Source: Macrostomum lignano
Taxonomy: Eukaryota
Reading direction: 5' to 3'
DNA: 64,000 nucleotides
Assembly (NCBI GenBank): GCA_002269645.1
Contig: NIVC01000206.1
Coordinates: forward strand, 610,803 to 674,802
Of the stretch, positions 17,084-64,000 are shown in pieces. Both the position numbers and the translations under genes were made by a program. The stretch's first letter is position 1, and each line of letters starts with the position of its first letter. The notes under the pieces are model-generated. The model did not search any database. It was not told the DNA's origin and was given only the letters and a program-made list of their open reading frames with translations.

Positions 17084-17088
17084 GATCG

Positions 17089-17155
<67 letters not shown>

Positions 17156-17182
17156 GATCGATCTATCTACCTATCTATCTAC

Positions 17183-17219
<37 letters not shown>

Positions 17220-17220
17220 G

Positions 17221-17305
<85 letters not shown>

Positions 17306-39544: not shown

Positions 39545-40817
39545 CTAGAAATAGTCTAGTAACCTACCTAGGCAAACTGGACTTAGTATTTAGGCCTAAC
39601 ATATGATCTTGTGATTTTTTACTACTTTAGCCTAACTTTCAATTATATGTAGCTTTTTAAAATTATATTTATCCCTATTGGAATAGAATCAGCAAAGCCT
39701 ACAAATGCTGCATTGAGCATTACGAAAGATAGGCTCTACTTCAAGTTCAAAGGGTGAAAGCAGTTGTTATTTGTCCAATGACTGGACAAATAACCTTTTG
39801 CTATTCAGGTTTTTCTTTTTTGCCAAAGACAAGATGCAAAATCGCACCTTTGGCTTTACTCATTTTCATTGTGCAATTTTAAGGCTCAAAGTGCAATTTC
39901 TCTTTTTCTTATTTTAAGGCAGTGCAAATAAGTTTTTAACAGAAAAATAGGTTGAGACCGCAGCTACATTTAAATTTCAGGGTGCAATTTTTCAATTTAA
40001 GGTGCATACATATTCTATGCACAAAAATAAACCCAGTTGCTATTTGTCTAGTTAAATTGCTAACATGAATATCTATTTGTTTAGTGATAAATATTCTAGA
40101 TTTTTAAGACCTTTTCTAGTATCCTGATTAATATTTTGTTATACTAGTGCAAGCAAAGCAGATATGTAATGCATGCGCAATTTGGTATAATTTGGTATAC
40201 AAGACAAATATTAATATAACATAATAATCAAGATACAAGTAAAAGTCTTTAAAGTCTAGGAATATTCACCCTTGGAGTTTTCGTAAAATAGAATATAAAT
40301 TTAACTAGACAAATAACAAAATGTCTATTTGTCCAGTATTAACTAGATGAATAAAGAAAGATAGCTATTATGCAGTAACCAGACAAATAACCACATTGCT
40401 TTTTGTCTGGTCACCAAACAAATAACAGTTGCCAAGGGTGAAAACCTAAAGATGTGTGCTTGAAGATAGTGTCAATTTATTATATAATATATTGCACTTT
40501 ATACCTTTAGCATTATTAAAAAATATTCCAAAAGAGCATTTTTGTCATAAATCAAAATTTGCTAATTTTTTAAAACTCTAAATTTTGACTGTTTTATTGC
40601 ATATTTATTTGAAAAAGTTTTTTTTGATTTGATATAAATTTATTTGATTTAATAAATTTATATCTCATTCCCATTACTTGTATTAGTCTCTATTGCAAAC
40701 CAAAATTGACTAAATTTTGACTAAAAAGCTTGAGGAAACTCATTTTAGGCAAATTTGTAGCTACTTAAGGTACCAATGTAAGATAAGATGCAACAGTCAT
40801 GATTGCAAAATAAAAAT

Positions 40818-41133
40818 ATCAGAGTATTATGATGATAGTATTAATCCATTCTCTGACCAAGTTTATGTGTGAAGACTGGCTTATCATCTATTATATAAGT
40901 CTTGTCTTTTGCACTAAGTTGGTGTGCGCGCCACCTTGGAAGGCTTCTCTATTTGTGCTGCTAATTTATTGTCACTTGGATATCTGGCAACCTATTCTAG
41001 CATTACAGGTTGTTAGTTTTCTGTCCTTTTTAAACAGAAACACCTGTTTTGTATGCCTGATAATCCAATATGACTGCATGCATATTTGGAGATTGCTGTT
41101 AAGATGTTAAATTTGGATCTGAATGACTCTGAT
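40818..41133 (+). ncRNA. SNORD17: Long C/D snoRNA, SNORD17/snR65-like, copy 1
   Basis: C box 40829-40835; TTAATCCATTCT+CTGA (D') complementary to 28S GAAUGGAUUAA (human U3797/yeast U2347 site); D box 41119-41122; terminal stem atcagagt/actctgat; 5' layout matches human SNORD17. Confidence 0.8.
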
Positions 41134-41245
41134 AAACTTGATAGTATCTGTAAATTTTCATATTGCAATTGTATTTAACAATATTATCAAACTAATTATC
41201 AAAAATGCTTGTTTAATTATCAAAAAACCCCAGCCTATTTGAATG

Positions 41246-41320
41246 TATAAATGATGCTACTCAACGTGTTTCGAGTCACAATGACTATGAATTAATAAAA
41301 AGAAACGATAACTGATCAAT
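41246..41320 (+). ncRNA. Weak C/D snoRNA candidate
   Basis: ATGATGC 41251, CTGA 41312; element AAGAAACGATAA loosely complementary to the 18S UUAU(C/G)GUU region; C box imperfect. Confidence 0.35.
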
Positions 41321-41507
41321 GTAATTTTGTGTGCTTATTTACAACTTAATTAATATTTGCAACTATGTCCCTCTAAATATTGTTCTTTGTTTACACACAT
41401 TTGCAGACTTGCTGTTTTTCCCTTGTCACGAGCAATTAACAAAAGCAAATCTGCTTCTGAAAATGTAAGTTCTAAAACATCTTGTACTTTAACAATTTGC
41501 TTTTTTA

Positions 41508-41587
41508 ATTTAATGATGAATACTTGACAAGCATATGTCGGAATGCACTCTTGTGCTTTCTGTAGATACTATTTTCATTCTGAATTT
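41508..41587 (+). ncRNA. SNORD27: C/D snoRNA U27/snR74-like (18S Am27 equivalent)
   Basis: C 41513-41519; GACAAGCATATG (41526-41537) + T + D' CGGA, same register as human U27; D 41580-41583. Confidence 0.8.
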
Positions 41588-41756
41588 TAAATTTATTCAA
41601 TCAACTTTTAGGCATTGGCGCTGTCTCATGTATGGCTTGACTTTGCGAATTTTATTTCAACTAACTTTGCAAATTTCAGGAGCTGGCATACAAAAATCGC
41701 CTACAAAGTCTTACAACATTTATTCGGTGAGTTTTTCTTCGAAGCTGTGAAACATT

Positions 41757-42148
41757 TGTCAGAGAAACGATGATGAATGCTTTAATCCATTCTCTGACTG
41801 AGCTTTTCAAATGTGCTTGAATAGTTATAAAAGGTCTTCCAAATTGGGGTTCTCTTTTTGCCTCTATTTGTTAACCTTTTCTTTCAGGCACAAATTTGAT
41901 TTGCTGGTGTGCGCGCCAGCTGGCTTGAACAGGCTCTCTTAGTGAAGTGCTGACTATTATTGTCACTTTAGGGTTTGCTTCAAGGGTGCTCGCTAAATTC
42001 CTCTTTATAGTCAGAGACTGATTATTTATTATACCGCCTTTGACTTGTTAGTGAGCACTTTAGAAGCGTGACCCGAAAAACGAGTGCTTGCACTTCTTTT
42101 TTGCAGAGCCGTTTGGATGTAAATTATGGTTCTGAGCGTTCTCTGACA
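41757..42148 (+). ncRNA. SNORD17: Long C/D snoRNA, SNORD17-like, copy 2
   Basis: C 41770-41776; same TTAATCCATTCT-CTGA guide; D 42132-42135; stem tgtcagagaa(a)cg / cgttctctgaca. Confidence 0.8.
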
Positions 42149-42201
42149 GCGATTATTAGTATATGGTTAGTTTTTATAGCCTAATTAACGCACCAGTTTG
42201 T

Positions 42202-42282
42202 CATCCACAAATGATGATCAATTTTACACCGTCATGCTGTTTGATTCGCCTGATAATAAAACTATGGCAGCTGATGTGGATG
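42202..42282 (+). ncRNA. C/D snoRNA, TACACCGTCATGCTGT family, copy a
   Basis: C 42211-42217, D' TTGA, D 42271-42274, stem catccaca/tgtggatg. Confidence 0.85.
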
Positions 42283-42399
42283 CTATCAATGTCCTTATGA
42301 CACTATTTAAAATCTAGAATATCGATTTTAAGTTTTATATCAGATTCAGAATCCTTAGAGATAAGGTTAGGTTGTGGCTTGGTTTAAAAAACTGGCTGT

Positions 42400-42477
42400 C
42401 AAAAATGATGATAATTATTCACAAATGTTTGTTTTGAGTTAACATGACAATTTCACATGCATCACCATCTGATGTAG
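42400..42477 (+). ncRNA. SNORD33: C/D snoRNA U33/snR55-like (18S Um1326 equivalent), copy a
   Basis: C 42405-42411; CATGCATCACCAT 42456-42468 + CTGA, complementary to 18S GUGGUGGUGCAUG. Confidence 0.85.
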
Positions 42478-42720
42478 TTTATTGAGTACATTTTAATGAA
42501 CATGTAAGCTATGCTTGCCATTTTATAAAAAGTACAACCTGTCGCCCAAAAACTCTACTTTCATAGGTACTGGTAGTAGATCATTAACAAGTTCTCAAGT
42601 CTACCGGTCCAGTGTTTCATTTTCTAAATTTAAGGTAATTATTAGTTTTGACTGTATTTTGCTTTTTGTGATCATACATAAACATAGCCTGAAATTTTCA
42701 TTTAAGCATGTACGTCGCTT

Positions 42721-42813
42721 GTATTCACCAAAAATGATGACCAATTTTTATACACCGTCATGCTGTTTGACACACTTTTGATAATTAAAAACAATGGCAG
42801 CTGAGGTGAATAC
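42721..42813 (+). ncRNA. C/D snoRNA, TACACCGTCATGCTGT family, copy b
   Basis: C 42734-42740, D 42801-42804, 9-bp stem gtattcacc/ggtgaatac. Confidence 0.85.
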
Positions 42814-43004
42814 AATAGGCATTTCCCTTAACACCTTTGCTGCTCATCATCATTCAGAATCATCGTTTATCTCCATTTTACTAACGAAAGTCTTTGTTCT
42901 TAAATCGATCTTTTAATTAAAAGCAGTCTGAAAAAATCCGAAGCAAATAGTTCTCTTTAGTACGAGTAGAGTCAGTAGCAAGCAAGCAACGTGTCCTCAG
43001 AAAT

Positions 43005-43090
43005 GTAATATGATGTTTGTTATCCCTGGCTTAGTGCAATAAGCTCTATGTAGTAAATACTTTATGCCAACTTCAATGGCTGCTGATTAC
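43005..43090 (+). ncRNA. SNORD1: C/D snoRNA snR38/SNORD1-like (28S Gm4362 equivalent)
   Basis: C ATGATGT 43010; GTTATCCCTG (43019-43028) + G + D' CTTA in snR38 register; D 43083-43086; stem gtaat/attac. Confidence 0.7.
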
Positions 43091-43207
43091 AGTTCTGTAT
43101 ACATACAATGATACGACACTTGCTGCTTTTTTGGTATTCAATTTTTAATTAGGACAATATATACTTTTTTTACTAATACTTAGGACTAGGTCTATTAACT
43201 GCAACTT

Positions 43208-43303
43208 GGGCGTTTTCAATGATGATTGGAATTACCGTCGGAAGTTGGTGTACCAATTTGTGTACGCTGGCGATTCTTTGAAGAAAATTTGCTGTCTGAG
43301 CCC
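43208..43303 (+). ncRNA. SNORD65: C/D snoRNA SNORD65/snR77-like (18S Um627 equivalent)
   Basis: C 43219-43225; TGGAATTACCG + T + D' CGGA, complementary to 18S CGGUAAUUCCA; D 43296-43299; stem gggc/gccc. Confidence 0.85.
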
Positions 43304-43363
43304 TTGATTTGCCATTTTTATGCCTATATTCTATAGTGTAGATAGCCTTGCGTATAAGCCTAC

Positions 43364-43447
43364 TTTTTATGATGATAAATACGTTTGCTTACCTTATCTG
43401 TGATCTCTTAAAGGGACGTGATAAGACACTACAGCGCTCTGATGTAT
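43364..43447 (+). ncRNA. SNORD48: C/D snoRNA U48-like (28S Cm1868 equivalent), copy a
   Basis: C 43369-43375; CTACAGCGCT+CTGA (43439), cf. human U48 CCGCAGCGCTCTGA; upstream TTTGCTTACC pairs with adjacent 28S GGUAAGCAGA. Confidence 0.8.
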
Positions 43448-43635
43448 ATATGTTGATCAGAAGTGTTTTTATATTGTAGAATATTTTATAAATTTCTCTA
43501 ACAATGCCACTTTCTCTTAATTACTACAGGCCTAAGCTGTCCTGGGGCCTTTTAAAATCAATATAAAAGTAAGTGAATTCAAAACCAATAACCAACTCAA
43601 TTTTTGCAGTAATAAGCTAAGCTCTACTATTATGT

Positions 43636-43710
43636 TTTTAATGATGACTATTTCCTTACCTACTATGATTTATTACTAATGTGAATGCAATATTTCCCGA
43701 ATCTGAAATG
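43636..43710 (+). ncRNA. C/D snoRNA to 28S GUAGGUAAGG (+ U50-like D guide), copy a
   Basis: C 43641; TTCCTTACCTACT + D' ATGA (43665); TTTCCCGAAT + D CTGA (43703) in U50/Gm2863 register. Confidence 0.75.
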
Positions 43711-43899
43711 CTAGTCTAAATTACATATATGTAAGCTTAAATTTTAAGAAGTTAATTAAAAAATAAATTTTGTCACTAATTATTTTCAGATTTAGCGATC
43801 CAGTTTGACTCTGATCTAAATTTAAGGTAAGCTTCAATTCACTTTTTTCATATTACTTTGATTTATGTATAACTTTTGTTACCAGCAATAGATTGGCTT

Positions 43900-43977
43900 C
43901 ATTCATGATGACTCAGATTTTACACCGTCATGCTGTATGATCTCGCATGAGTTTAGTTCTATTTGTCTCTGAGTTTT
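43900..43977 (+). ncRNA. C/D snoRNA, TACACCGTCATGCTGT family, copy c
   Basis: C 43905-43911, D' ATGA, D 43969-43972. Confidence 0.8.
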
Positions 43978-44114
43978 AAAGCCTTTATTAATACCTTACA
44001 AACTCTTTAAAACCCCCGGATTTTAAACCCACCGTATTCCAATCCCCGGAACTATTTATTGCATACATCCTTAAATTAAAGTCATACTGAAACAAAAAAT
44101 TTAAAGTTAGCATA

Positions 44115-44184
44115 GAGGTTTGATGAATGTAGTAAATTCGTGTTAAATAAAGATTTAAGACAAGCATTGATTGATCTGACTAAG
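44115..44184 (+). ncRNA. Weak C/D snoRNA candidate
   Basis: TTGATGA 44120, CTGA 44176; TTTAAGACAAGCAT (44154-44167) matches 13/14 to 18S AUGCUUGUCUCAAA, but box spacing is atypical. Confidence 0.25.
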
Positions 44185-44317
44185 CGATAAGATGAGAGAT
44201 TAATGAGCGGCACAAACACCAGAAAAAGCAGACAAACTTCACATGCTTACAGTTACTGTCCTGATTGAGTTACAGAGTTGAGACTTGATATCGAGACACA
44301 AAATAATTCTAAAGAAT

Positions 44318-44468
44318 GGTAGGGTGGCAAGTCAATAGAATTTCAGGTGGGGTGGCAGGTCAATAGAATTTCAGGTAGGGTGGCAGGTCAATAAAATCTC
44401 AGGTAGGTTAGCAGTCAACAGAATTTCAGGTAGGGTGGCAGGTCAATTGAATTTCAGGTAGGGTGGCA
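44318..44468. repeat. 28-bp minisatellite (~5 copies)
   Basis: GGTAGGGTGGCAGGTCAATAGAATTTCA units. Confidence 0.85.
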
Positions 44469-44479
44469 ATTAATCAAAT

Positions 44480-45075
44480 TCTAATACTAATCAAACCCGA
44501 GCAGCACGAGGCAAGACATTATCGTGATGGTGAATCTGACTTCTCTAAGCCACCCGCCATCCGAGGACGCCAACCCAACCAGTTTGAGACCGCCAGATGT
44601 TGGAGGAGGGAATGAGCGACTGATCGTTCGGCAACAAACTTGATGCTAGCGTTAAGCAAAGTTACGGCAGCCAAAGGTTAGTCAATTTTAAAACCGCTTT
44701 TACACATCTCGCCAGATAAGGGAAGGAGAGAGAGGCGAGGGTTGTTACGTCGACAAAGCAGACTAGCTTTAAAAGTGCACAGTGCCGTTCAGGATTGACT
44801 TTATGACTCGAAATTTTACACGCTTGTGTCGGAATAGCTAGAGATTGTTTGTGTCAAATTTTAGTAGGGTTGGTAAAAGTGGAGCGCCGCTATGGAGGAT
44901 TAAGTAAAAAATCCCGCTTTCTTTGCAGCAACTTTGCACTTTAAGGTGGGAATACTGGGAAGACGCTCTCCGTAGTGAGGTTAGGGTGGGTGCAAAACGG
45001 TGTCATTTGGTTGAGCGGTTTGAGAGTCCATGGCGAACAAAATTGGCCACAGACACAGTTTACAGATTTAAGGTA
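44480..45075 (+). mobile_element. Possible non-autonomous Helitron/Helentron-like insertion in a host-gene intron
   Basis: GC-richer island in an AT-rich intron; ends resemble rolling-circle elements (ctaatactaat...aaacccgagcagcacg; ttggttgagcggtttgagag...acagacacag). Confidence 0.3.
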
Positions 45076-45155
45076 TAAATGATGATAGAATATTGACACC
45101 TCTTGTCTGATATTTACTAAGTAAATGCGGAGTTTATTAGCTCTATCTGATCAAG
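45074..45155 (+). ncRNA. SNORD44: Dual-guide C/D snoRNA: U44-like (18S Am166) + snR48-like (yeast 25S G2791 equivalent), copy a
   Basis: C 45079; TGACACCTCTTGT + CTGA (45107); TATTAGCTCTAT + CTGA (45147). Confidence 0.88.
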
Positions 45156-45328
45156 TATTAAGCTCTTTTGTCCTAATAGAAATCGTTAAGAATCGATGCA
45201 AGTTTTCATATTCACTTATTTCATTTTAGAGGACGCTAAAATCCAGCTGGAAAATTGTAAGCCTTCTTAACAGTGCTTCAGGTCAGTTAGCAATGCTTAA
45301 GTATTTTTCCCCATCCTTATTTTACTTT

Positions 45329-45412
45329 TTACAATGATGAATTAATTATAGCATAGTTCATATGAACTGTACCCAGTGTACGGCATGTACAGAATTTTCA
45401 AGCCTGATATTT
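45329..45412 (+). ncRNA. SNORD77: C/D snoRNA U77-like (28S Am1521 equivalent)
   Basis: C 45334; GCATAGTTCA (45351-45360) + T + ATGA; D 45404-45407. Confidence 0.85.
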
Positions 45413-45592
45413 TATCTACCTATTAGCTACCTATTAGTTGTACCTATTTGATAAAACTACATCTTTTTTACAAGTCAGATATTTTTTTAATTTCTTTCCA
45501 GTTTGCCGCGTCAATGAAGTTTCACTGCTACATCCATCCAAGGTAATTTTTATTGCTCAGCTCTATTTAAATATATAACATATCTATAAATG

Positions 45593-45663
45593 CAGTGGCG
45601 GATCCGGGATTTTTTCCGTGAGGTCAGCCGACCCCCTTGATCCCCCTTCTGGATCCGATAGTG
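45593..45663. mobile_element. Degenerate 71-bp hAT-type MITE
   Basis: CAGTGGCGGATCC...GGATCCGATAGTG; flanks tataaatg / tatagata (6/8 TSD match). Confidence 0.55.
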
Positions 45664-45667
45664 TATA

Positions 45668-45743
45668 GATAAGTGATGAAAATAACACATCCGTGTTTGA
45701 TTTGGTCATGATATATAATTTCCATGCATCACCATCTGATTTG
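45668..45743 (+). ncRNA. SNORD33: C/D snoRNA U33-like, copy b
   Basis: GTGATGA 45673; CATGCATCACCAT + CTGA 45736. Confidence 0.85.
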
Positions 45744-45911
45744 CTTTTTTATTGGTATTAATAAAAAAATATGTGCTTTTAAAAAACTCGTCTCTACTGT
45801 AGCCATATTTTCACTTGCCCATTTTAGTGCATTTTTCCCTGGTTGGATATCAAGTCAAGTGTTAACTTGCAAAGTCAGGTAGGCTTGCACTCTTGAACTT
45901 GTGTTTTTGTT

Positions 45912-46079
45912 AGTTGCGACTTTCTCGTTTCAATCACCGACACGCAAAAAATATCTTATTGGTGACTGATTCATTTAGTCGCTAGATTACACTGACAACC
46001 GCATAAAATCCAGAAGCAGAGTAGAGATCTTTTGTTTATCTCCCAAAGTGTCTGCTTTTGATGAGCGCGGATTACATTA
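45912..46079 (+). ncRNA. Candidate box H/ACA snoRNA
   Basis: Hairpin 1 (gcgact/agtcgc; tcaccga/ttggtga), H box AGATTA 45984-45989, hairpin 2 (aaccgc/gcggatt; cagaagcaga/tctgcttttg), ACA at 46074 followed by 3 nt. Confidence 0.45.
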
Positions 46080-46143
46080 CTATTAATAGTAGTATTTAAC
46101 AAAACCGCCCTTTTATAATGGCAGAAATGGCACGCAATGTTAT

Positions 46144-46222
46144 AAATAATGATGATAACCCATAATTCTTCACTTTGAACTGAACAAAAACCAACTGATG
46201 TTAGCACTGGGTTCTGAACTAT
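46144..46222 (+). ncRNA. SNORD37: Dual-guide C/D snoRNA: U37-like (28S Am3697) + SNORD88/snR76-like (28S Cm3680), copy a
   Basis: C 46149; ATTCTTCACTTTGA + A + CTGA (46180); AGCACTGGGTT + CTGA (46214). Confidence 0.9.
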
Positions 46223-46262
46223 CATAATCATGGCTGCCACCTATATTTGTTTAGATTCTTGT

Positions 46263-46350
46263 TAATTATGATGAAATTTTAATTTCCACAGTTCAATCGT
46301 CCGATAATGCTTGATTAGATGCGGACTATTATTAGCTCTACCTGATGATT
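46263..46350 (+). ncRNA. SNORD44: U44-like C/D snoRNA, copy b (D' guide replaced)
   Basis: C 46268; D' CCGA 46301 preceded by CAGTTCAATCGT; TATTAGCTCTAC + CTGA 46342. Confidence 0.85.
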
Positions 46351-46511
46351 AAACAGTTGTTTTGTTATTTAAGTGAGTTTTTGCATCTTTAATTGCAATT
46401 TTCATGTTATTTTTTATTTCAGATGTCTTCTACCGACCAATGTCATCTCGGGGCTTTGAGGGGTAAGGCGTCTTTTTTATCTACTATTAGTAGTATAATT
46501 TTCACTTTCTA

Positions 46512-46617
46512 TTTACATGATGATCTCTATTGATTAGTCTTTCTGAGCTTTATAATTAGTTAATAAACATTTTAACCAATTACAAAACTGCTGACTAACG
46601 CCCCTATCTGATGTGAA
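46512..46617 (+). ncRNA. SNORD80: U80/snR60-like C/D snoRNA (28S Gm1612 equivalent), copy a
   Basis: C 46517; GATTAGTCTTT + CTGA (46543); CGCCCCTAT + CTGA (46608). Confidence 0.85.
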
Positions 46618-46817
46618 TCAGAAAGTGTTAGTTGAAACTTTCATATGGTATTGAAGTATTTCATAAGACACCCGTCTTAAGAAATTCATCCATTCTTTGT
46701 TTTAACACTGTTTTAGAATCCGATTCGTTTTTATGGCAAAATGGCACTGGTTCAACAAGTCTACAGAGCCAACAGGTGAGTTAATAGCCAGAATTATTTT
46801 TATCCGTCCTATGCTGG

Positions 46818-46901
46818 CTGTTATGATGATATTGATCACCTTTGGCTTTTGATAGGTTTCTTTAAATGAAAATTATCTACCATGCATCACCATCTGAGAA
46901 A
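46818..46901 (+). ncRNA. SNORD33: C/D snoRNA U33-like, copy c
   Basis: C 46823; CATGCATCACCAT + CTGA 46894. Confidence 0.85.
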
Positions 46902-47075
46902 TTTTTCTAACATTAACCAAAATCTGAGCCAATGCCAACTCCTTATGTGTCCAGAAATTCTACAGAAATTCTCCATCTCTACTCTGCATTCCAGTTGGCC
47001 CGGTCAAATTTCAAACAAGAGTTAACAGGTAAAACTGACATTGTTTTAGTTTCTAACATCCCATATACAATTCAG

Positions 47076-47162
47076 CATCCATTAATGATGATTTCATTTT
47101 ACACCGTCATGCTGTTTGATTTCAATAATGAAATTTAACCATATTGGCAGCTGAGATGGATG
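47076..47162 (+). ncRNA. C/D snoRNA, TACACCGTCATGCTGT family, copy d
   Basis: C 47085, D 47151, stem catcca/tggatg. Confidence 0.85.
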
Positions 47163-47361
47163 CTCTACGGTGTACATTTGGTCTTATAGCATATTTAAGA
47201 AAATTATACTCGTAGATAGCTAATTTGACTGCGTGTGTTCTAAGACGAATTTCTCTAAGTTTCTTCTTATCGTGTAACTTATAAATGGATAGTTTTGAGC
47301 AAACAAGCTGGCAATGGTGTAATAATCTTATCTATCAGATAGAATACACGCTTGGCTATTT

Positions 47362-47443
47362 TTATCATGACGATCCAGCAATTTAGTATCAACCTTATCA
47401 GTGTATTGGATACAATATAAAGCACTACAGCGCTCTGTCGTCT
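47362..47443 (+). ncRNA. SNORD48: U48-like snoRNA, copy b, degenerate boxes (possible pseudo-snoRNA)
   Basis: CACTACAGCGCT guide retained, but C = ATGACGA (47367) and D = CTGT (47435). Confidence 0.5.
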
Positions 47444-47642
47444 AGATAAAGCTGGTATTTTAGCTCCTATTCGAGGCCTAAGTGTTTTGCTTAACGTATC
47501 TTCCTTATTTTATGTTGGTGCCTCCCTAAAATCCTCAGATTATGTGACGCACCTGATGCTGCATGATTCAGTTTACTTGTAAGTGACTGCCAATATGCTC
47601 GTAATATAATTAAATAAATCTATAATTTGTATACCAGAAACT

Positions 47643-47730
47643 AATTAGTGATGAATAATTCCTTACCTACTATGATAATGTTTTAGAAAACTCCAGTTGT
47701 GATTAAAAAATATCCCTAATCTGACTTTAT
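47643..47730 (+). ncRNA. C/D snoRNA to 28S GUAGGUAAGG, copy b
   Basis: GTGATGA 47648; TTCCTTACCTACT + ATGA; D 47721 (U50-like guide diverged to TATCCCTAAT). Confidence 0.75.
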
Positions 47731-47902
47731 TACTAATTATAGTATTTTACGCTACTATCTTAGGCATTTTTTTCAATTACTTTAAGTAGTCACTTTCCTC
47801 TCAAAATTTTAGTACATATTCTTGCTTGGCTGGCTAGTGCTGCAACTAATTTAGCAAGGTAAGATCAGTAGGACCTTCTGTAGAGGCTTATGTTATATTA
47901 AG

Positions 47903-47980
47903 AATCCGTGATGATAACTCAGAATTCTTCACTTTGACCTGATTATTGACAATGTGATGATAGCACTGGGTTCTGAATTG
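47903..47980 (+). ncRNA. SNORD37: Dual-guide U37 + SNORD88-like snoRNA, copy b
   Basis: GTGATGA 47908; D' CTGA 47939; C' GTGATGA; AGCACTGGGTT + CTGA 47973. Confidence 0.9.
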
Positions 47981-48033
47981 TTTTTAATATAACTAGCCTC
48001 TAGTTTTTTTAAATCAGATTGCTTTTTTAATTA

Positions 48034-48118
48034 GCTACATGATGACAAAAACAATTTGACACCTCTTGTCCGATGTAAATAACATAAATGCGGACTGTTA
48101 TTAGATATACCTGAGAAA
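48034..48118 (+). ncRNA. U44/snR48-type snoRNA, copy c (18S guide decayed)
   Basis: C 48039; TGACACCTCTTGT + CCGA 48070; D guide TATTAGATATAC (2 changes) + CTGA 48111. Confidence 0.85.
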
Positions 48119-48303
48119 TCATTTCTAGGACTCTAGTAAAATGCGCAAATAATAAGCTACTATTGTTTAAGTCAATCAATTAAATCTTTTCAGCAGCGAA
48201 TGCGGCTGATTGCTTCAAAATATGTCGAATTCAATTTTTTTCGCAGGTAAGCGTCTCTTATCAGTTGTTTGATTCTGAACTCTTAAGCAAGCTACTCTAC
48301 CAC

Positions 48304-48378
48304 ATGTAATGATGATTTATATGGATTAGTCTTTCTTAGTTCTCAAATGTGCAGACAAGCGCCCCTATCTGACTACTG
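48304..48378 (+). ncRNA. SNORD80: U80-like snoRNA, copy b
   Basis: C 48309; GATTAGTCTTT + CTTA; CGCCCCTAT + CTGA 48369. Confidence 0.85.
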
Positions 48379-48557
48379 TCAATTATAACTATGCAAATTA
48401 GCTCATTTAAGTAGTGTGCCAGACCTTTTATTGTCTGATTGTTAATTTACCATTTTATTTTTGCAGGAGTTCAATCAACTCCAGTTTGTGCGTTAAGATC
48501 TGCAGCTTTGAGGTGAGACAATGCTATTTCTAACCCAATAAATCAGGAGTTCACGTT

Positions 48558-48649
48558 GTAAAATGATGAGACATTTTTTGATCAACCATATGAGTCAATG
48601 TAGCTATTGGCTAAATGAATTGCGTTTTTTAAACTTCTCTCTGATTTAT
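48558..48649 (+). ncRNA. SNORD7: mgU6-47-like snoRNA with extra 18S 5'-end guide, copy a
   Basis: C 48563; GATCAACCA + T + ATGA (48590); TTAAACTTCTCT + CTGA (48641), one mismatch to U6. Confidence 0.75.
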
Positions 48650-48682
48650 TGCCCCTTTCCAATATCCTACTAACCAGCTGTA

Positions 48683-48770
48683 CATCAATGATGAGACATT
48701 TCCTGGATCAACCATATGAGCCTGACTATTGTTAGGTCTATGAATGGTTTCTAATCTTCTCTCTGAATGA
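48683..48770 (+). ncRNA. SNORD7: mgU6-47-like snoRNA with extra 18S 5'-end guide, copy b
   Basis: C 48688; GGATCAACCA + T + ATGA (48716); CTAATCTTCTCT + CTGA (48763), 12/12 to U6 AGAGAAGAUUAG, fifth nt pairs with A47. Confidence 0.88.
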
Positions 48771-49319
48771 TAGCAAATATCTACTAGGTCTGTTACTACA
48801 GGATTAAGCTGGGTAACTTTTAAGCGTCACTTGCTTCTCTTTACATTTCAGAGCCTCGAAATTGCTTCTGGAGATTTCCTTTTTTATATTATCCGGCTCT
48901 ACAAAACAATTGTGATAGACATTTTATTTGATTTGATTTGATTAAAGTCAAATTTTGACAGCAAATTGTAACTAATTTCTGTTATAATATATTTATTTAC
49001 TGAGCCTATACGCTTGCTAACAAACGGTCTTTCTCTGTTTTCGCTGTTTCATGCATTTAAAGAGTTTATTAAATACAAATACGTAATATGATCTTGAAAT
49101 CATGATATTCGTGATTTGATTACACCCTGAGAACATTCTGTCACTTTCAATAAATTTAAGGCATATTAGGATAGAGGATAGAAAAATGCAAGGCCCGTAA
49201 CAGAAACTAAATATGTACAGAACGTGAAGGATTGTGCAGTTCTGAAAGCTAGTGTGTGAGGGAGCTGTAGTCGGGTAGTAGGTAGTAAGGGTGGAAAATG
49301 TAGGTTAGTAGTCATACAT

Positions 49320-49471
49320 GCGCAACCTTGGGAATCACTCGGCCGTTTCTATTGGCAACACATGTAAGTCGCTATTGGCTGAGAGCAGTCGCGTGACTAC
49401 TATTCCGTCCAATAGCGGCTTACATGTGTGTGTTGCCAATAGAAACGGCCGGGTGAATCCCTAGGTTGCGC
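49320..49471. repeat. ~60-bp-arm inverted repeat (hairpin, MITE-like)
   Basis: 49320-49378 is the reverse complement of 49409-49471; ~30-nt loop; no clear TSD. Confidence 0.8.
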
Positions 49472-49508
49472 CCAAGCATGGTAGTAGTGTTAAAGACGCA
49501 GGTTTAGG

Positions 49509-49660
49509 GTAGCAGTGTAAAGGGAGGCAGGTGTATGTAGCAGTGTAAAGGGAGGCAGGTGTATGTAGCAGTGTAAAGGGAGGCAGGTGTAGGGTAGCAG
49601 CGTGAAGGGAGGCAGGTGTAGGTAGCAGTGTAAAGGGAGGCAGGTGTAGGTAGCAGCGTT
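49509..49660. repeat. 28-bp minisatellite (~5 copies)
   Basis: TAGCAGTGTAAAGGGAGGCAGGTGTA(T/G)G units. Confidence 0.85.
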
Positions 49661-49750
49661 AAGAGCTACGAACTTACTACTTTCGTTTCTACTTATATTC
49701 AGTCTTGCTTGATAATAATTTAAACAAATCACTGCAACCTTCCCACAGCC

Positions 49751-50299
49751 ATGTTTCGCAAATTCGACGACAAAGAGAACATCTCGTCCGTAAACAACGC
49801 CAAGAACAGTGTCCAGAAGGGTATCAGAAACACCATCCTGACGCAGTATCCGGGATGCGCAGATTACGTTGACCAGATTCTACCCAAGAAGGAAACGCTC
49901 AGCGTTGTCAAATGCCACGAGCACATCGAGCTGTACGCCAACCCGGCTGGCGAGGTGCTGTTCTTCAGGCAGCGCGACTCGCCGCTGTATCCCAGCTTGA
50001 AACTGCTGCACAGATATCCGTTCATGCTGCCGCACATGCAGGCGGACAAGGGCGCTATCAAATTCCTGCTGAACGGGTCCAATGTGATGTGCCCGGGCCT
50101 GACCACGCCTGGCGGCCGGCTGTCCCAGGTGCCAGCTAGCACAGTTGTTGCCGTCATGGCCGAAGGCAAACAGCACGCGTTAGCAATCGGCTTGACGGCG
50201 ATGAGCGCGGACGAGATTGCCAGCAAGAACAAAGGAGTTGGCATCGAGACTGTGCACTGTTTAAATGACGGCCTGTGGCGGCTGCGTTCTGTCAAGTAG
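49751..50299 (+). CDS. MCTS1: Malignant T-cell-amplified sequence 1 (MCT-1/Tma20; PUA-domain ribosome recycling/reinitiation factor)
   Basis: 182-aa intronless ORF: MFRKFDDKEN...VKCHEHIEL...DKGAIKFLLNGSNVMCPGLT...GKQHALAIG...HCLNDGLW. Confidence 0.97.
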   Translation: MFRKFDDKENISSVNNAKNSVQKGIRNTILTQYPGCADYVDQILPKKETLSVVKCHEHIELYANPAGEVLFFRQRDSPLYPSLKLLHRYPFMLPHMQADKGAIKFLLNGSNVMCPGLTTPGGRLSQVPASTVVAVMAEGKQHALAIGLTAMSADEIASKNKGVGIETVHCLNDGLWRLRSVK

Positions 50300-53396: not shown

Positions 53397-54323
53397 ATGA
53401 GTTCCAGCATCTTAACTGGACTGACTGCGGCGATGCTGCTGCCACTCCTGGTGCACTGCGGCAATGGAACCATGCACAGCAGCATCTCGCTCGGCGGCTG
53501 CGTGGTGCCGCAGACTCCGCAGCACTCGCTGGCGGCCTCGAGCGCCCGCATGTGCGCCTTCCTGTGCTCTCAGCTCCGTCGTCCTTGCATCGCCTGGAGC
53601 CACCGCGCAGGCGTCTGCAACATGTCGGACAGCCTCCAGACCGCCAGTCTGACGAACGACACCGACTGCCAGGCGTGGAGCGCCCTGCGCCAGCTCGGCC
53701 TCGTCGCCTTCTGGCCCATGAGCAACGTCACTCGGACTCGCAATGCGGTCTCGAACAGCGGCCATCTCGACCTGCAGGAGAACATCCCGATGCAGTACAC
53801 GGACAGCGCCGTCAACTTCACTGGTCAGTCGGGTGTGTCAGAGCGGTTCAACATTGACGAGCTGACTTCGGTGTGTCTCACCAGCCTCACCATGTCAGTG
53901 TGGGTCAAGGTCACCAACCCAGCGAGAGGTTCGATGCCTCTGCTGGAGGGCCTCACAATGCCTTCTTCATACCACACTCGGTTTTGGCTTCATCCTACAA
54001 CTACCGACATCGAGTTCACCGTTGCATTCAAGGTCCGAGTGTCCGGACCCACCGACACGGCCAGCGGTTGGACCCACATCGCCGCGGTGTACGACAAGCA
54101 GACACCGGAAGTCAGGATCCTCGTCAACGGAACTCGACAGGCCACCAGCGGCTCGGCCACCGCTTTGACCTCGTGCGCGGACTTCGGCAGCAGCGTGCAG
54201 ATCGGAGCCGTCAGCCGCAATGCCGATCACAAACGCGTGTTCCAAGGCTTCATGAGATGCTTCGGAGTGTCAGAGAGAGCTCTGAGCGACTCTGAAATTG
54301 CCGCTTTGATCCAGCTGTGCTAA
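53397..54323 (+). CDS. Secreted PAN/Apple + LamG/pentraxin-like lectin, copy 2
   Basis: 308-aa intronless ORF, near-identical to copy 1 except the signal peptide and one central segment. Confidence 0.85.
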   Translation: MSSSILTGLTAAMLLPLLVHCGNGTMHSSISLGGCVVPQTPQHSLAASSARMCAFLCSQLRRPCIAWSHRAGVCNMSDSLQTASLTNDTDCQAWSALRQLGLVAFWPMSNVTRTRNAVSNSGHLDLQENIPMQYTDSAVNFTGQSGVSERFNIDELTSVCLTSLTMSVWVKVTNPARGSMPLLEGLTMPSSYHTRFWLHPTTTDIEFTVAFKVRVSGPTDTASGWTHIAAVYDKQTPEVRILVNGTRQATSGSATALTSCADFGSSVQIGAVSRNADHKRVFQGFMRCFGVSERALSDSEIAALIQLC

Positions 54324-56439: not shown

Positions 56440-56771
56440 CTACTGAAAGTAGATCAGCTGTCATCCAAAAATATTTTTGCTTCTTAGCAACAATTTTGCC
56501 GCCATGCATCATCCATGACCTTAGAAAAAGTATACGAGCCATGTGTTCTCAATCCATCCATTATAGTTTAAGTAGAAAAAAAATCCCGCACAACTTGCAC
56601 AACTTGCATGTTCAGTGATTTCATGAAAAATTTCGTACATCAATTTACCAGAACTGGACACAAGAGTGGAGCATGGTTAATGGAGTTCTGCATGTTGACA
56701 GCCAGCCAAGATAAATTTGCTGACTAAAATCTCAGTCTCACTTTGGGTCTTCGATTTTTGTTTGGATTGCG

Positions 56772-57345
56772 ATGCTTCTGCTTCTGCCGCTGCTTCTCGG
56801 CCTGCTTTTCTGCATCGGTGCGAACGCCGAGCTGCACAGCACTCGCTGGCGGCCTCGAGCGCCCGCATGTGCGCCTTCCTGTGCTCTCAGCTCCGTCGTC
56901 CCTGCATCGCCTGGAGCCACCGCGCAGGCGTCTGCAACATGTCGGACAGCCTCCAGACCGCCAGTCTGACGAACGACACCGACTGCCAGTCGTGGAGCGC
57001 CCTGCGCCAGCGCGGTCTCGTCGCCTTCTGGCCCATGAGCAACGCCACTCGGACTCGCAATGCGGTCTCGAACAGCGGCCATCTCGACCTGCAGGAGAAC
57101 ATCCCGATGCAGTACACGGACAGCGCCGTCAACTTCACTGGTCAGTCGGGTGTGTCAGAGCGGTTCAACATTGACCAGCTGACTTCGGTGTGTCTCGACA
57201 GTCTCACCATGTCAGTGTGGGTCAAGGTCACCAATGCGTCAAGGGGTTCGATGCCTCTGCTGGAGGGCCTCACAATGCCTTCTTCATACCACACTCGATT
57301 GTGCTTCGTCCTTCAACTGCCGACATCATGTTCGCCCGAATGCAT
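56772..57345 (+). pseudogene. PAN + LamG lectin, copy 3 (pseudogene)
   Basis: 43-nt frameshifting deletion at CAGCA microhomology after ELHS, 1-nt deletion near 57303, C-terminal third missing. Confidence 0.8.
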
Positions 57346-57961
57346 ATCACTTTTATATTGTTTTAAGCAGTCGTCTTCAGAACCAAGCATACATCTACAT
57401 GTACATCACTAGAACTATAACGCCTTTATGTACACGTCTATGTTTTGGCTTCGTCTGTCTGCCCATTTCCAGATATGATTATCTATCTGCTTCTAAAAAG
57501 ACATTTAGACGCGATCGTACGCCCGAGAAGGGCTCATGACGTTGAAAGTTAAAAATTTAGTAGTGTAGCATAAAATCACTATATATTTTTTAGTTTTATT
57601 CGTCAGACCCTACTTACAGAAAGCAATGAGAATTTAATAAAATCGCAATCAATTATTTTATGCTTGGATTTGGAGCATAGCATTCAACTATTAGGTAGTA
57701 TTCTATAATATTAATCAGAAGCATCAATACGACAGCTCCCTCAAACAGGATAAAAACCGACACCGTACAAACGCAAGCGGTCCCTTTTGAGTACAAAATT
57801 CTTTTTCGCCTCAGTTTACACGTCTCAAAGCAATTTGAGACTTTAATGACTAACAATATATGCACGAATAACAGTGACACTCGTCAGACTGACAGATGGC
57901 ATGCACCTCTCCAACAGGTGACCCTCATCTGTCTGGCTTGAGCTAAACATCCATCTGTCCA

Positions 57962-58156
<195 letters not shown>

Positions 58157-58202
58157 GGTGTCTGTCTGTCTGTCTGTCTGTCTTAGTGTCTGTCTGTCTG
58201 TG

Positions 58203-58235
<33 letters not shown>

Positions 58236-58238
58236 TGG

Positions 58239-58316
<78 letters not shown>

Positions 58317-59662: not shown

Positions 59663-60948
<1,286 letters not shown>

Positions 60949-60999
60949 GTGCTGTCTTGCTAAGGGAATTTCTAAGAAGATTAAGGGGAGATCCGTGTG

Positions 61000-63900: not shown

Positions 63901-64000
63901 TCGTGGAGGGAAGATTTGAGGGGAGACTCGGGCACGAATGTTTTAGAGTCAGGGAGGAGAGATTTGAGGGGAGATTCTTGGGAAGAAGATATTGAGAGAA

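What the first reader, a model, noticed from the sequence alone, without database searches (positions are those of the whole stretch)
40749..49170. Very dense non-coding snoRNA host gene: ~26 C/D guides in 8 kb
Seen in sequence: about 19 short exons with no ORF (exon 43530-43568 has stops in all three frames) and about 26 RTGATGA...CTGA units, most with terminal stems and 9-16-nt antisense elements in the +5 register. Established knowledge: the recognisable guides are spread over many vertebrate hosts (GAS5: U44/U77/U80; SNHG1: U27; RPL13A: U33; EEF2: U37; SNX5: SNORD17; C6orf48: U48), and GAS5 holds about 10. Inference: a lineage-specific 'super-host' pools guides for 18S, 28S and U6 in one transcript, and is probably missed or mis-annotated by gene predictors.
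Basis: partly seen in the sequence, partly recalled or inferred. Interest (0 to 1): 0.92.

Follow-up and report, generated by a model that had tools for sequence, protein, structure and literature searches.

The report
Flatworm multi-snoRNA non-coding host gene
An 8.5-kb stretch of the flatworm Macrostomum lignano genome carries about 27 small RNA genes that guide chemical marking of ribosomal and spliceosomal RNA, apparently in the introns of one non-coding gene; this layout is already known from flies and mammals.

Summary
On the + strand of 40749-49170 there are 25 RTGATGA C boxes, against 1.8 expected and 2 on the - strand. I delimit 27 C/D units: 25 canonical, plus u02 and u08 with a near-canonical C box. 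Of these, u21 is degenerate and u26 is decaying. There is also one candidate H/ACA snoRNA.

Box-adjacent antisense elements, in the +5 register, hit known methylation sites:
- 18S A27, A166, U627 and U1326
- 28S C3680, A3697 and U3797, and the SNORD38-type site
- U6 A47

The units fall into 14 sequence families. They evolve about half as fast as the surrounding intron across four genomic copies.

A chain of 19 consensus-flanked short exons with no ORF over 60 aa is predicted. The last unit of every intron ends 88±9 nt upstream of the 3' splice site. Six introns hold 2-4 units.

The source is M. lignano Mlig_3_7. No Rfam hit reaches gathering score, and I could obtain neither RNA data nor the species' own rRNA.

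The architecture matches UHG/GAS5-type hosts. Drosophila Uhg1 has 16 snoRNAs in 4.2 kb, the same density. This is a new, unusually large member of a known kind, not a new kind. Interest is moderate to low.

The parts
40664..49172 (+). Predicted non-coding snoRNA host gene. The 5' end is uncertain: either a TATAAAT at 40633 followed by the pyrimidine-rich CTCATTCCC at 40664, or an AG acceptor at 40748. The 3' end is set by AATAAA at 49150.
   Evidence: corresponds to NIVC01000206.1 about 651,466-659,974
40824..41065 (+). u01, long C/D unit (about 240 nt), SNORD17-like. D' guide ttaatccattc targets 28S GAAU*GGAUUAA (human U3797).
41246..41320 (+). u02, weaker C/D candidate (C box ATGATGC). D guide aaacgataa targets 18S near nt 110. 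No constraint signal between copies.
41508..41588 (+). u03, SNORD27-like. D' (CGGA) guide gacaagcatatg targets 18S A27.
41765..42026 (+). u04, long C/D unit, paralogue of u01. Same D' guide. D box at 42018 lies 85 nt before the 3' splice site.
42202..42282 (+). u05, member of the four-copy family with conserved guide ttacaccgtcatgctgt. This pairs with 28S ACAGCAGGACGGUG with 1 mismatch. 8-bp terminal stem.
42400..42477 (+). u06, SNORD33/snR55-like. D guide catgcatcaccat targets 18S U1326.
42722..42812 (+). u07, paralogue of u05. 8-bp terminal stem.
43004..43091 (+). u08, C/D unit (C box ATGATGT). 5-bp stem. Target unresolved.
43208..43304 (+). u09, SNORD65/snR77-type. D' (CGGA) guide tggaattaccg targets 18S U627.
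43364..43447 (+). u10, C/D unit. Target unresolved. Paralogue of u21.
43636..43711 (+). u11, C/D unit. D' guide ttccttacctact resembles the antisense of 28S GUAGGUAAGG. Paralogue of u22.
43900..43977 (+). u12, divergent member of the u05 family. Both guide substitutions seen in other copies are C-to-T, which would keep pairing with a G as a G-U wobble.
45074..45155 (+). u13, SNORD44-type. D guide tattagctcta targets 18S A166.
45329..45412 (+). u14, C/D unit. D' guide agcatagttcat targets 28S GGUGAA*CUAUGC. Weak snR60/Z15 hit.
45668..45744 (+). u15, snR55/SNORD33-like. Targets 18S U1326.
45914..46078 (+). Candidate H/ACA snoRNA: hairpin, AGAUUA, hairpin, ACA, then 3 nt. Both hairpins are invariant in the 4 copies. 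The H box stays ANANNA in L122 (AGAUCA).
   Evidence: no target found
46144..46222 (+). u16, SNORD37+SNORD88-type. D' guide targets 28S A3697. D guide targets 28S C3680.
46262..46352 (+). u17, D guide tattagctcta targets 18S A166. 6-bp stem.
46511..46618 (+). u18, SNORD38/snR61-type. D' guide gattagtcttt targets 28S AAAGA*CUAAUC. D guide cgcccctat targets the adjacent AUAGGGGCG.
46818..46902 (+). u19, SNORD33-like. Targets 18S U1326.
47074..47164 (+). u20, paralogue of u05. 10-bp terminal stem.
47362..47443 (+). u21, degenerate paralogue of u10 (ATGACGA, CTGT). Probable pseudogene.
47643..47729 (+). u22, paralogue of u11.
47897..47988 (+). u23, best Rfam hit (SNORD37, 38.2 bits against a gathering score of 45). 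14-nt guide targets 28S A3697. D guide targets C3680.
48034..48119 (+). u24, paralogue of u13. The shared D' guide ttgacacctcttgt is kept. The D guide is degraded.
48304..48377 (+). u25, paralogue of u18 (D' box CTTA).
48558..48649 (+). u26, paralogue of u27 with a degraded U6 guide. The C box is destroyed in L122 (ATAATAA).
48683..48771 (+). u27, mgU6-47/SNORD7/Z30-type. D guide ctaatcttctct is a perfect 12-nt complement of U6 nt 43-54, with +5 = A47. The guide is invariant in 4 copies.
40749..40777 (+). Predicted exon 1, 3' part. Donor at 40778 GTAAGA, or 40770 GTACCA.
41407..41464 (+). predicted exon 2
41680..41726 (+). predicted exon 3
42107..42165 (+). predicted exon 4
42344..42365 (+). 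predicted exon 5
42567..42634 (+). predicted exon 6
43530..43568 (+). Stops in all three frames.
43790..43826 (+). predicted exon 8
45230..45281 (+). Predicted exon 9. Further small exons may lie in 44084-45072.
45502..45542 (+). predicted exon 10
45828..45878 (+). predicted exon 11
46423..46462 (+). predicted exon 12
46717..46775 (+). Predicted exon 13 (donor scores 9/9).
46995..47028 (+). predicted exon 14
47539..47578 (+). predicted exon 15
47813..47858 (+). predicted exon 16
48194..48246 (+). predicted exon 17
48467..48512 (+). predicted exon 18
48852..49172 (+). Predicted terminal exon, with AATAAA at 49150-49155.

Best explanation
The region is a UHG/GAS5-type non-coding snoRNA host gene of the flatworm Macrostomum lignano, about 8.5 kb long, + strand.

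Proposed mechanism (inferred from the family, not shown here):
1. RNA polymerase II makes one precursor.
2. About 19 short exons are spliced into a roughly 1.15-kb RNA with no meaningful reading frame.
3. The excised introns are debranched and trimmed by exonucleases back to the snoRNPs.
4. The snoRNPs (Snu13, Nop56, Nop58, fibrillarin) assemble on the C/D kink-turns, releasing 65-110-nt box C/D snoRNAs and two units of about 240 nt.
5. Through the 10-14 nt upstream of box D or D', these RNAs direct 2'-O-methylation of the nucleotide paired to the fifth position.

Sites identified:
- 18S A27, A166, U627 and U1326
- 28S C3680, A3697 and U3797, the SNORD38-type A, and at least two more 28S sites
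- U6 A47

The array grew by repeated local duplication: 27 units in 14 families. It is now partly redundant, and a few copies are decaying.

What is shown: boxes, guides, register, strand bias, paralogy, and constraint between genomic copies.
What is inferred: transcription as one unit, splicing, the processing route, and the methylation itself.
For: Boxes and strand bias:
- 25 C boxes on the + strand against 1.8 expected and 2 on the - strand.
- All sub-threshold Rfam C/D hits in the 64-kb window fall on the + strand of this region. Their family names agree with the guides found: SNORD27, SNORD33/snR55, SNORD37, SNORD88, Z30, SNORD17.

Guides:
- Box-adjacent 12-mers complementary to rDNA of unrelated eukaryotes: 9 observed against 1.0±1.1 for shuffled guides. 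For 11-mers: 15 against 4.0±1.7, and 0 for reversed guides.
- The +5 nucleotide falls exactly on 18S A27, A166, U627 and U1326 in human numbering.
- The two 28S sites of u16/u23 and u01/u04 are exactly 100 nt apart, as are human A3697 and U3797. The u16/u23 D guide points 17 nt upstream of A3697, which is C3680.
- The u27 guide is a perfect 12-mer against U6, with +5 = A47. This is the mgU6-47 site (PMC5855946).

Paralogy and constraint:
- Paralogues conserve the boxes and guides while the rest diverges.
- Substitution rate against three other genomic copies: units 1.38%, predicted exons 1.06%, remaining intron 2.55%. Fisher p = 2e-7 for units and 3e-7 for exons, each against intron.

Host gene:
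- 19 exons with GT/AG consensus. The longest ATG ORF in the spliced model is 60 aa. No Pfam domain is found in any genomic ORF of 55 aa or more.
- The distance from the D box to the 3' splice site is 88±9 nt (range 69-105) in all 18 introns. This positional constraint is known for intronic snoRNAs (PMC2780460).
Against: - No Rfam family reaches its gathering score; the best is 38.2 bits against 45.
- No RNA-seq or small-RNA data were available, so the exons, the single transcript and the mature ends are predictions.
- The species' own rRNA and U6 were not available. Ten units (u02, u05, u07, u08, u10, u11, u12, u20, u21, u22) have no perfect target in foreign rDNA.
- Six introns contain 2-4 units. 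This breaks the vertebrate rule of one snoRNA per intron and needs either unrecognised micro-exons or endonucleolytic processing.
- Only 14 of 27 units have a terminal stem of 4 bp or more.
The recalled 18S has the correct length of 1869 nt and reproduces four known sites, which supports it.
Confidence: 0.8

Rival explanations
1. The snoRNAs lie in 5'-UTR introns of the downstream protein-coding gene MCTS1/Tma20 (49751-50299). Alternatively, the host and MCTS1 form one polycistronic precursor that spliced-leader trans-splicing resolves. Either way the host would not be an independent lncRNA.
For: - MCTS1 lies 580 nt downstream on the same strand. It is intronless and has an AG acceptor (ttcccacag) directly before its ATG.
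- The arrangement is kept in all four genomic copies.
- Translation-related genes are typical snoRNA hosts (established knowledge; PMC11014333).
Against: - The last predicted exon carries AATAAA at 49150 and has no good donor before it.
- A palindrome and a 28-bp tandem repeat fill the gap between the two genes.
- Nineteen 5'-UTR exons would be unprecedented.
Confidence: 0.1
2. The array is a splicing-independent polycistronic snoRNA cluster of the plant, trypanosome or yeast type. It would be cut by an endonuclease, and the 'exons' would be chance matches to splice consensus.
For: - Six inter-exon intervals hold 2-4 units with only 35-185 nt between them.
- A candidate H/ACA sits among the C/D units, as in plant and trypanosome clusters (PMC2780460).
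Against: - Every interval that ends at a predicted 3' splice site has its last D box 69-105 nt upstream.
- Donor and acceptor consensus are good, one donor scoring 9/9.
- Predicted exons diverge less than half as fast as the remaining intron.
Confidence: 0.08
3. Most units are non-expressed duplicates (snoRNA pseudogenes or retro-copies). Only a minority would be functional guides.
For: - u21 has both boxes mutated.
- The u26 C box is destroyed in L122 and its U6 guide is degraded.
- The u24 D guide is degraded.
- u02 shows no constraint.
- One genomic copy (L125) has lost u05-u12 completely, the 3' part of u04 (from window 41918) and all but the last ~25 nt of u13 (deletion = window 41918-45181).
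Against: - 14 of 27 units are identical between the window and L122, where the surrounding sequence differs by 2.3-4.4%.
- Paralogues that are only about 80% identical overall keep boxes and guides intact.
- BLAST similarity between paralogues stops at the unit borders, so these are old duplicates kept by selection.
Confidence: 0.1

Closest known systems
Drosophila melanogaster Uhg1 and the other Uhg lncRNAs
   Same: A non-coding, multi-exon host whose introns carry box C/D guides for 18S and 28S. The density is the same: 16 snoRNAs in about 4.2 kb, against 27 in 8.4 kb here. It contains paralogous isoforms. Guides that sit in different hosts in vertebrates are pooled in one host (PMC4430873; PMC11014333).
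   Different: - More units here (27 C/D plus 1 candidate H/ACA).
- A U6 guide is included.
- It is in a flatworm; I found no paper on flatworm snoRNA host genes.
- No E-box (CACGTG) was found in 40201-40850, unlike the Myc-bound Uhg1 promoter.
Mammalian GAS5, SNHG1 and other SNHG lncRNAs
   Same: Short, poorly coding exons, with snoRNAs in the introns about 70-90 nt upstream of the 3' splice site. Guide families are shared (SNORD44 in GAS5, SNORD27 in SNHG1).
   Different: - The mammalian hosts carry at most about 10 snoRNAs and follow one snoRNA per intron. Here six introns hold 2-4 units.
- 5'TOP status is not established here.
Intronic snoRNA gene clusters of rice and Drosophila
   Same: Several snoRNAs within a single intron of a host gene (PMC2780460).
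   Different: Here multi-unit introns are mixed with 12 single-unit introns in the same gene.
Imprinted mammalian arrays (SNORD116/115 in SNHG14; SNORD113/114 in MEG8)
   Same: Tens of tandemly duplicated C/D units, one host transcript and non-coding exons (established knowledge).
   Different: Those are near-identical orphan snoRNAs without rRNA targets. Here there are 14 different families with canonical rRNA or snRNA targets.
Neurospora crassa UHG-like C/D clusters
   Same: Non-coding hosts with only short ORFs, C/D snoRNAs in successive introns, and a conserved distance to the 3' splice site (PMC2780460).
   Different: The fungal clusters hold only a few snoRNAs each.

Membership tests
Box C/D snoRNA (2'-O-methylation guide) | C box RUGAUGA near the 5' end and D box CUGA near the 3' end, 60-100 nt apart (longer in a few families) | tested here: met
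   25 of 27 units are canonical. u02 and u08 have one C-box mismatch. u21 is degenerate.
Box C/D snoRNA (2'-O-methylation guide) | An antisense element of 10 nt or more ending 0-2 nt before box D or D', with the nucleotide opposite position 5 being a modifiable target | tested here: met
   At least 17 units meet this. The +5 nucleotide equals 18S A27, A166, U627 and U1326; 28S C3680, A3697 and U3797; and U6 A47. The enrichment exceeds shuffled guides. Foreign rDNA was used, not the species' own.
Box C/D snoRNA (2'-O-methylation guide) | A terminal stem bringing the C and D boxes together (kink-turn) | tested here: inconclusive
   14 of 27 units have a flanking stem of 4 bp or more, including stems of 8-10 bp for u05, u07, u20 and u23. 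The others have 1-3 bp.
Box C/D snoRNA (2'-O-methylation guide) | A match to a curated Rfam covariance model at its gathering score | tested here: not met
   No hit at gathering score. The best is SNORD37 at 38.2 bits against 45. This is expected for short, fast-evolving guides from a distant phylum.
Box C/D snoRNA (2'-O-methylation guide) | A stable 60-250-nt RNA bound by fibrillarin, Nop56 and Nop58, with methylation at the predicted site | not testable with these tools
   No expression, RIP or RiboMeth data are accessible.
Non-coding multi-snoRNA host gene (UHG/GAS5/SNHG type) | snoRNAs lie in introns, on the same strand, at a constrained distance upstream of the 3' splice site | tested here: met
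   There are 18 predicted introns. The last D box lies 88±9 nt before the AG. The splice sites are predicted from consensus only.
Non-coding multi-snoRNA host gene (UHG/GAS5/SNHG type) | The spliced product lacks a conserved ORF | tested here: met
   The longest ATG ORF is 60 aa in a 1.15-kb model. Stops are frequent in all frames, and no Pfam hit passes its cut-off.
Non-coding multi-snoRNA host gene (UHG/GAS5/SNHG type) | A spliced, polyadenylated pol II transcript spans all exons | not testable with these tools
   Only an AATAAA at 49150 and a TATAAAT at 40633 can be seen.
Non-coding multi-snoRNA host gene (UHG/GAS5/SNHG type) | 5'TOP/TCT initiator | tested here: inconclusive
   CTCATTCCCATTACTT lies 31 nt after TATAAAT, but it is interrupted by A and the transcription start site is unknown.
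Non-coding multi-snoRNA host gene (UHG/GAS5/SNHG type) | One snoRNA per intron (the vertebrate rule) | tested here: not met
   Six introns hold 2-4 units: u01+u02; u07-u10; H/ACA+u16+u17; u20+u21; u23+u24; u26+u27. This is as in the Drosophila and rice intronic clusters.
Box H/ACA snoRNA (the candidate at 45914-46078) | Hairpin, H box ANANNA, hairpin, then ACA 3 nt from the 3' end; pockets about 14-16 nt from the H or ACA box | tested here: met
   The layout is AGAUUA plus ACA-UUA. Hairpin z-scores are -3.4 and -1.9. The 3' pocket lies about 13-15 nt from ACA. Both hairpins are invariant in 4 copies.
Box H/ACA snoRNA (the candidate at 45914-46078) | Bipartite pocket complementarity flanking a target U in rRNA or snRNA | tested here: not met
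   No conserved target was found in foreign rDNA. There is no Rfam hit. It remains a candidate only.

The most novel reading that the evidence does not exclude
This may be the largest constitutive (non-imprinted) snoRNA host described in an animal. One precursor would supply about 14 different guide specificities for 18S, 28S and U6, plus an H/ACA. A third of its introns carry several snoRNAs and so would need a splicing-independent, endonucleolytic release step. The precursor might also be co-transcribed with the downstream translation re-initiation factor gene MCTS1 and separated from it by spliced-leader trans-splicing. That would couple ribosome modification and a translation factor in one operon-like unit.
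Probability: 0.1. Interest if true: 0.55.

Novelty: new member of a known kind. Interest (0 to 1): 0.35.

Why it matters
It gives a first, fairly complete look at how a flatworm organises its methylation-guide snoRNAs. I found no paper on flatworm snoRNA host genes in the library searched.

It shows that the UHG architecture, known from flies, mammals and fungi, can be scaled to nearly 30 units. It also supplies ready-made predictions of conserved methylation sites in 18S, 28S and U6 of a regeneration model organism.

Practically, it flags an 8.5-kb gene that protein-based predictors will leave empty. It also shows how Rfam gathering thresholds miss real snoRNAs in distant phyla. It does not reveal a new mechanism.

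Tried and rejected
1. Rfam at gathering scores found only a tRNA elsewhere in the window, so I moved to E-value mode.
2. My first terminal-stem filter was too strict and dropped most units.
3. Complementarity screens that allowed G-U pairs or one mismatch against 118 metagenomic rDNA contigs were too noisy (in controls ran at about half the real counts). Only 11-12-mers allowing at most one G-U pair, in box-adjacent register, separated signal from noise.
4. An automatic H/ACA scan with strict hairpin borders found nothing on the + strand. The candidate was found by eye and then folded. Its pocket search gave no conserved target.
Only U6 matched.
6. I could not obtain M. lignano rRNA.
7. The 1.1-kb GC-richer insert at 43977-45073 has no copy elsewhere in the window and no ORF.
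8. No E-box was found near the 5' end.
9. Literature searches for flatworm snoRNA host genes returned nothing relevant.
10. I considered an assembly artefact and rejected it. Internal paralogues are only 74-85% identical, and the locus is present in four separate scaffolds.

Full report
SOURCE. The MCTS1-like ORF just downstream (49751-50299) has its best named relatives in molluscs and flatworms, at 60-66% identity. Exact look-up places it on GCA_002269645.1 scaffold NIVC01000206.1, and the returned locus is 100% identical to the window. That assembly is Macrostomum lignano Mlig_3_7 (PMC10733133). Window position p corresponds to record position p + 610,802, and the window is the last 64 kb of the scaffold.

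Three further genomic copies of the locus exist in this neopolyploid assembly:
- L122 (NIVC01004669.1)
- L125 (NIVC01000218.1)
- L126 (NIVC01004954.1)

They are 96-98% identical where they align.

THE OBSERVATION.
- RTGATGA occurs 25 times on the + strand of 40749-49170. A first-order Markov model gives 1.8±1.4, and the - strand has 2.
- Each C box is followed by CTGA at a C-to-D span of 64-95 nt. Two long units span 232 and 252 nt.
- I delimit 27 units, u01-u27. Twenty-five are canonical. u02 (ATGATGC) and u08 (ATGATGT) have one C-box mismatch. u21 (ATGACGA, CTGT) is degenerate.
- Rfam at gathering scores reports no snoRNA.
- In E-value mode over the whole window, all 12 C/D-family hits are on the + strand between 41508 and 47959. 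None lies in the other 55 kb or on the - strand.
- On the region alone about 30 sub-threshold C/D hits appear, all but one (sR7, 44397-44451, - strand) on the + strand. They include SNORD37 (38.2 bits), SNORD33 (36.3), snR55 (35.6), SNORD27, Z102/R77, SNORD34, SNORD88, Z30 and SNORD17.

The feature is therefore real and far beyond chance.

GUIDES AND TARGETS. I had no M. lignano rRNA. I fetched 120 eukaryotic rDNA contigs from metagenomes through a 5.8S motif and used the 118 that could be oriented as surrogate targets.
- Loose criteria were noisy.
- Complementary 12-mers (one G-U pair at most) ending 0-2 nt before a D or D'-like box and present in at least 5 loci: 9 observed, against 1.0±1.1 (maximum 4) for shuffled guides and 0 for reversed guides.
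- For 11-mers: 15 observed against 4.0±1.7.

Numbering used my recollection of human 18S. The recalled sequence has the correct length of 1869 nt. On it, the nucleotide opposite guide position 5 is:

| Units | Box used | Site | Human family |
|---|---|---|---|
| u03 | D' | 18S A27 | SNORD27 |
| u13, u17 | D | 18S A166 | SNORD44 |
| u09 | D' | 18S U627 | SNORD65 |
| u06, u15, u19 | D | 18S U1326 | SNORD33 |

These are all known human sites.

In 28S:
- The u16/u23 D' guide (13-14 nt) and the u01/u04 D' guide (11 nt) point to nucleotides exactly 100 nt apart in intron-free loci. Human A3697 (SNORD37) and U3797 (SNORD17) are also 100 nt apart.
- The u16/u23 D guide points 17 nt upstream of A3697, which is C3680 (SNORD88). 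These site numbers are from my own knowledge.
- u18/u25 pair with AUAGGGGCG and GAAAGACUAAUC, which is the SNORD38/snR61 region.
- u14 pairs with GGUGAACUAUGC.

A47 is the mgU6-47 site, conserved as far as fission yeast (PMC5855946). The weak Rfam Z30 hit lies on its paralogue u26.

At least 17 of the 27 units thus carry a convincing guide.

The four-copy family u05/u07/u12/u20 keeps ttacaccgtcatgctgt invariant. This pairs with the universal 28S ACAGCAGGACGGUG except at one position. It needs the species' own rRNA to settle. Ten units remain without a firm target: u02, u05, u07, u08, u10, u11, u12, u20, u21 and u22.

PARALOGY AND CONSTRAINT. BLAST and family alignments give 14 families:
- u05/07/12/20
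- u06/15/19
- u13/24, with u17 sharing the D guide
- u16/23
- u18/25
- u26/27
- u11/22
- u10/21
- u01/04
- singletons u02, u03, u08, u09, u14

Similarity stops at the unit borders. Within units it is concentrated in the boxes and guides. This is the signature of old duplicates under selection for guide function.

Against L122, units differ at 0.96% of sites and the rest of the gene at 2.26% (Fisher p = 1.8e-5). Counting indels, the figures are 1.0% and 4.4%. Fourteen C/D units are identical.

Pooled over three copies the substitution rates are:

| Class | Rate | Fisher p against intron |
|---|---|---|
| snoRNA units | 1.38% | 2e-7 |
| predicted exons | 1.06% | 3e-7 |
| remaining intron | 2.55% | n/a |

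Signs of decay and retention:
- u21 has both boxes mutated.
- The u26 C box is ATAATAA in L122, and its U6 guide varies between copies.
- The u27 U6 guide is invariant in all four copies.
- The u24 D guide is degraded.
- Both guide substitutions in u12 are C-to-T, which keeps a G-U pair.
- L125 lacks window 41918-45181 altogether (u05-u12, the 3' part of u04 and nearly all of u13).

HOST GENE.
- Consensus scoring gives a chain of 19 exons. They are 21-67 nt long, plus a 321-nt last exon with AATAAA at 49150.
- The spliced model is about 1.15 kb. Stops are frequent in all frames, and the longest ATG ORF is 60 aa.
- The genomic region has only seven ORFs of 55 aa or more in six frames. None has a Pfam domain above its cut-off.
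- In all 18 predicted introns the last D box ends 69-105 nt (88±9) before the acceptor AG. This is the positional constraint known for splicing-dependent processing of intronic snoRNAs (cited in PMC2780460). It also supports placing the u04 D box at 42018.
- Six introns hold more than one unit: u01+u02; u07-u10; H/ACA+u16+u17; u20+u21; u23+u24; u26+u27. This departs from the vertebrate rule of one snoRNA per intron. It matches the 'intronic gene clusters' of rice and Drosophila (PMC2780460). Small unrecognised exons cannot be excluded.
- The 5' end is uncertain. A TATAAAT at 40633 precedes a pyrimidine-rich CTCATTCCC at 40664. No E-box was seen.

EXTRA ELEMENT. Region 45914-46078 folds as hairpin, AGAUUA, hairpin, ACA, then 3 nt. 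Hairpin z-scores are -3.4 and -1.9. Both hairpins are invariant in the four copies, and the only changes lie in the linker. The H box stays ANANNA. No rRNA target was found with foreign rDNA and there is no Rfam hit. It is a candidate H/ACA snoRNA, which would make this a mixed host.

MECHANISM. By analogy with characterised UHG/GAS5 hosts, I infer the following steps:
1. Pol II transcribes one precursor.
2. The precursor is spliced.
3. Excised introns are debranched and trimmed by exonucleases back to the assembled snoRNPs (Snu13, Nop56, Nop58, fibrillarin).
4. The spliced RNA is probably unstable.

Upstream units in multi-unit introns would need endonucleolytic separation or alternative splicing. 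None of these steps was testable here.

RIVALS.
- The exons could be 5'-UTR exons of, or co-transcribed with, MCTS1. MCTS1 lies 580 nt downstream on the same strand, with an AG acceptor directly before its ATG. About 10%.
- The array could be a splicing-independent polycistron. About 8%.
- Most copies could be silent. About 10%; the constraint data argue against this.

COMPARISON AND NOVELTY.
- Drosophila Uhg1 encodes 16 snoRNAs within about 4.2 kb (PMC4430873). That is 3.8 per kb, against 3.2 per kb here.
- Seven Uhg lncRNAs host 42% of the fly's non-intergenic C/D snoRNAs (PMC11014333).
- Fungal UHG-like clusters and the mammalian GAS5 and SNHG genes share the design (PMC2780460).
- Mammalian imprinted arrays exceed this number of units, but their snoRNAs are orphans (own knowledge).

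This locus is a large new member of a known kind in a phylum whose snoRNAs are essentially undescribed. It is not a new category.

Noticed in passing
window 45914-46078 (+): Candidate box H/ACA snoRNA (hairpin, AGAUUA, hairpin, ACA) in the same intron as u16 and u17. Both hairpins are invariant in four genomic copies. No target was found.
   Followed up: partly
L125 4767-7632 and L126 4764-7632 (inserted at window ~47520): A 2.87-kb ORF-less element with terminal inverted repeats of about 470 nt (96-98% complementary), probably a non-autonomous DNA transposon. It sits in a host-gene intron in two of the four genomic copies.
   Followed up: partly
L125 2224-2430 versus window 41918-45181: One genomic copy lacks 3.26 kb of the array (u05-u12, the 3' part of u04 and nearly all of u13). 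The number of units per copy therefore varies between subgenomes or haplotypes.
   Followed up: partly
window 49751-50299 (+): Intronless MCTS1/Tma20 (PUA-domain translation re-initiation factor) gene 580 nt downstream of the host gene. An AG acceptor (ttcccacag) lies directly before the ATG, suggesting spliced-leader trans-splicing. The 182-aa protein is identical in at least two other scaffolds.
   Followed up: partly
window 49320-49471 and 49480-49663; also 44318-44468: A 150-nt palindrome gives sub-threshold miRNA-family hits on both strands. It is followed by 6.5 copies of a 28-bp G-rich tandem repeat. A different 28-bp repeat (5.4 copies) lies inside the 1.1-kb insert in the host intron, and its copy number differs between genomic copies.
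   Followed up: no
window 20345-21265 (-), 53397-54323 (+), 56717-57412 (+): Three paralogous single-exon ORFs of about 306 aa with a signal-peptide-like N terminus and a Laminin_G_3/ConA-like domain (Pfam E = 4e-16). The third is truncated.
   Followed up: partly
window 415-520 (+): An isolated C/D-like unit (ATGATGA, internal CTGA, terminal CTGA, 6-bp outer stem GTACAT/ATGTAC). A 10-nt complement to 28S UGCUCUGAAU is present but not in register with a box. Unverified.
   Followed up: partly
window 19836-19905 (-): A tRNA gene, the only Rfam hit at gathering score in the window (34.6 bits).
   Followed up: no
window 3600-4400, 8200-8700, 10350-10780, 15860-17310, 58150-58560, 60100-63990: Very abundant micro- and minisatellites, such as (TCTA)n, (CTGT)n and G/A-rich repeats at the scaffold end. 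They produce long spurious ORFs in several frames.
   Followed up: no
L073, L084, L033 (metagenomic rDNA): Some 28S genes carry insertions of 65-345 nt between CCCAGUGCU and GUCAAAGUG, or further downstream. These are probably group I introns, at the very site targeted by the SNORD88/SNORD37-type guides.
   Followed up: no
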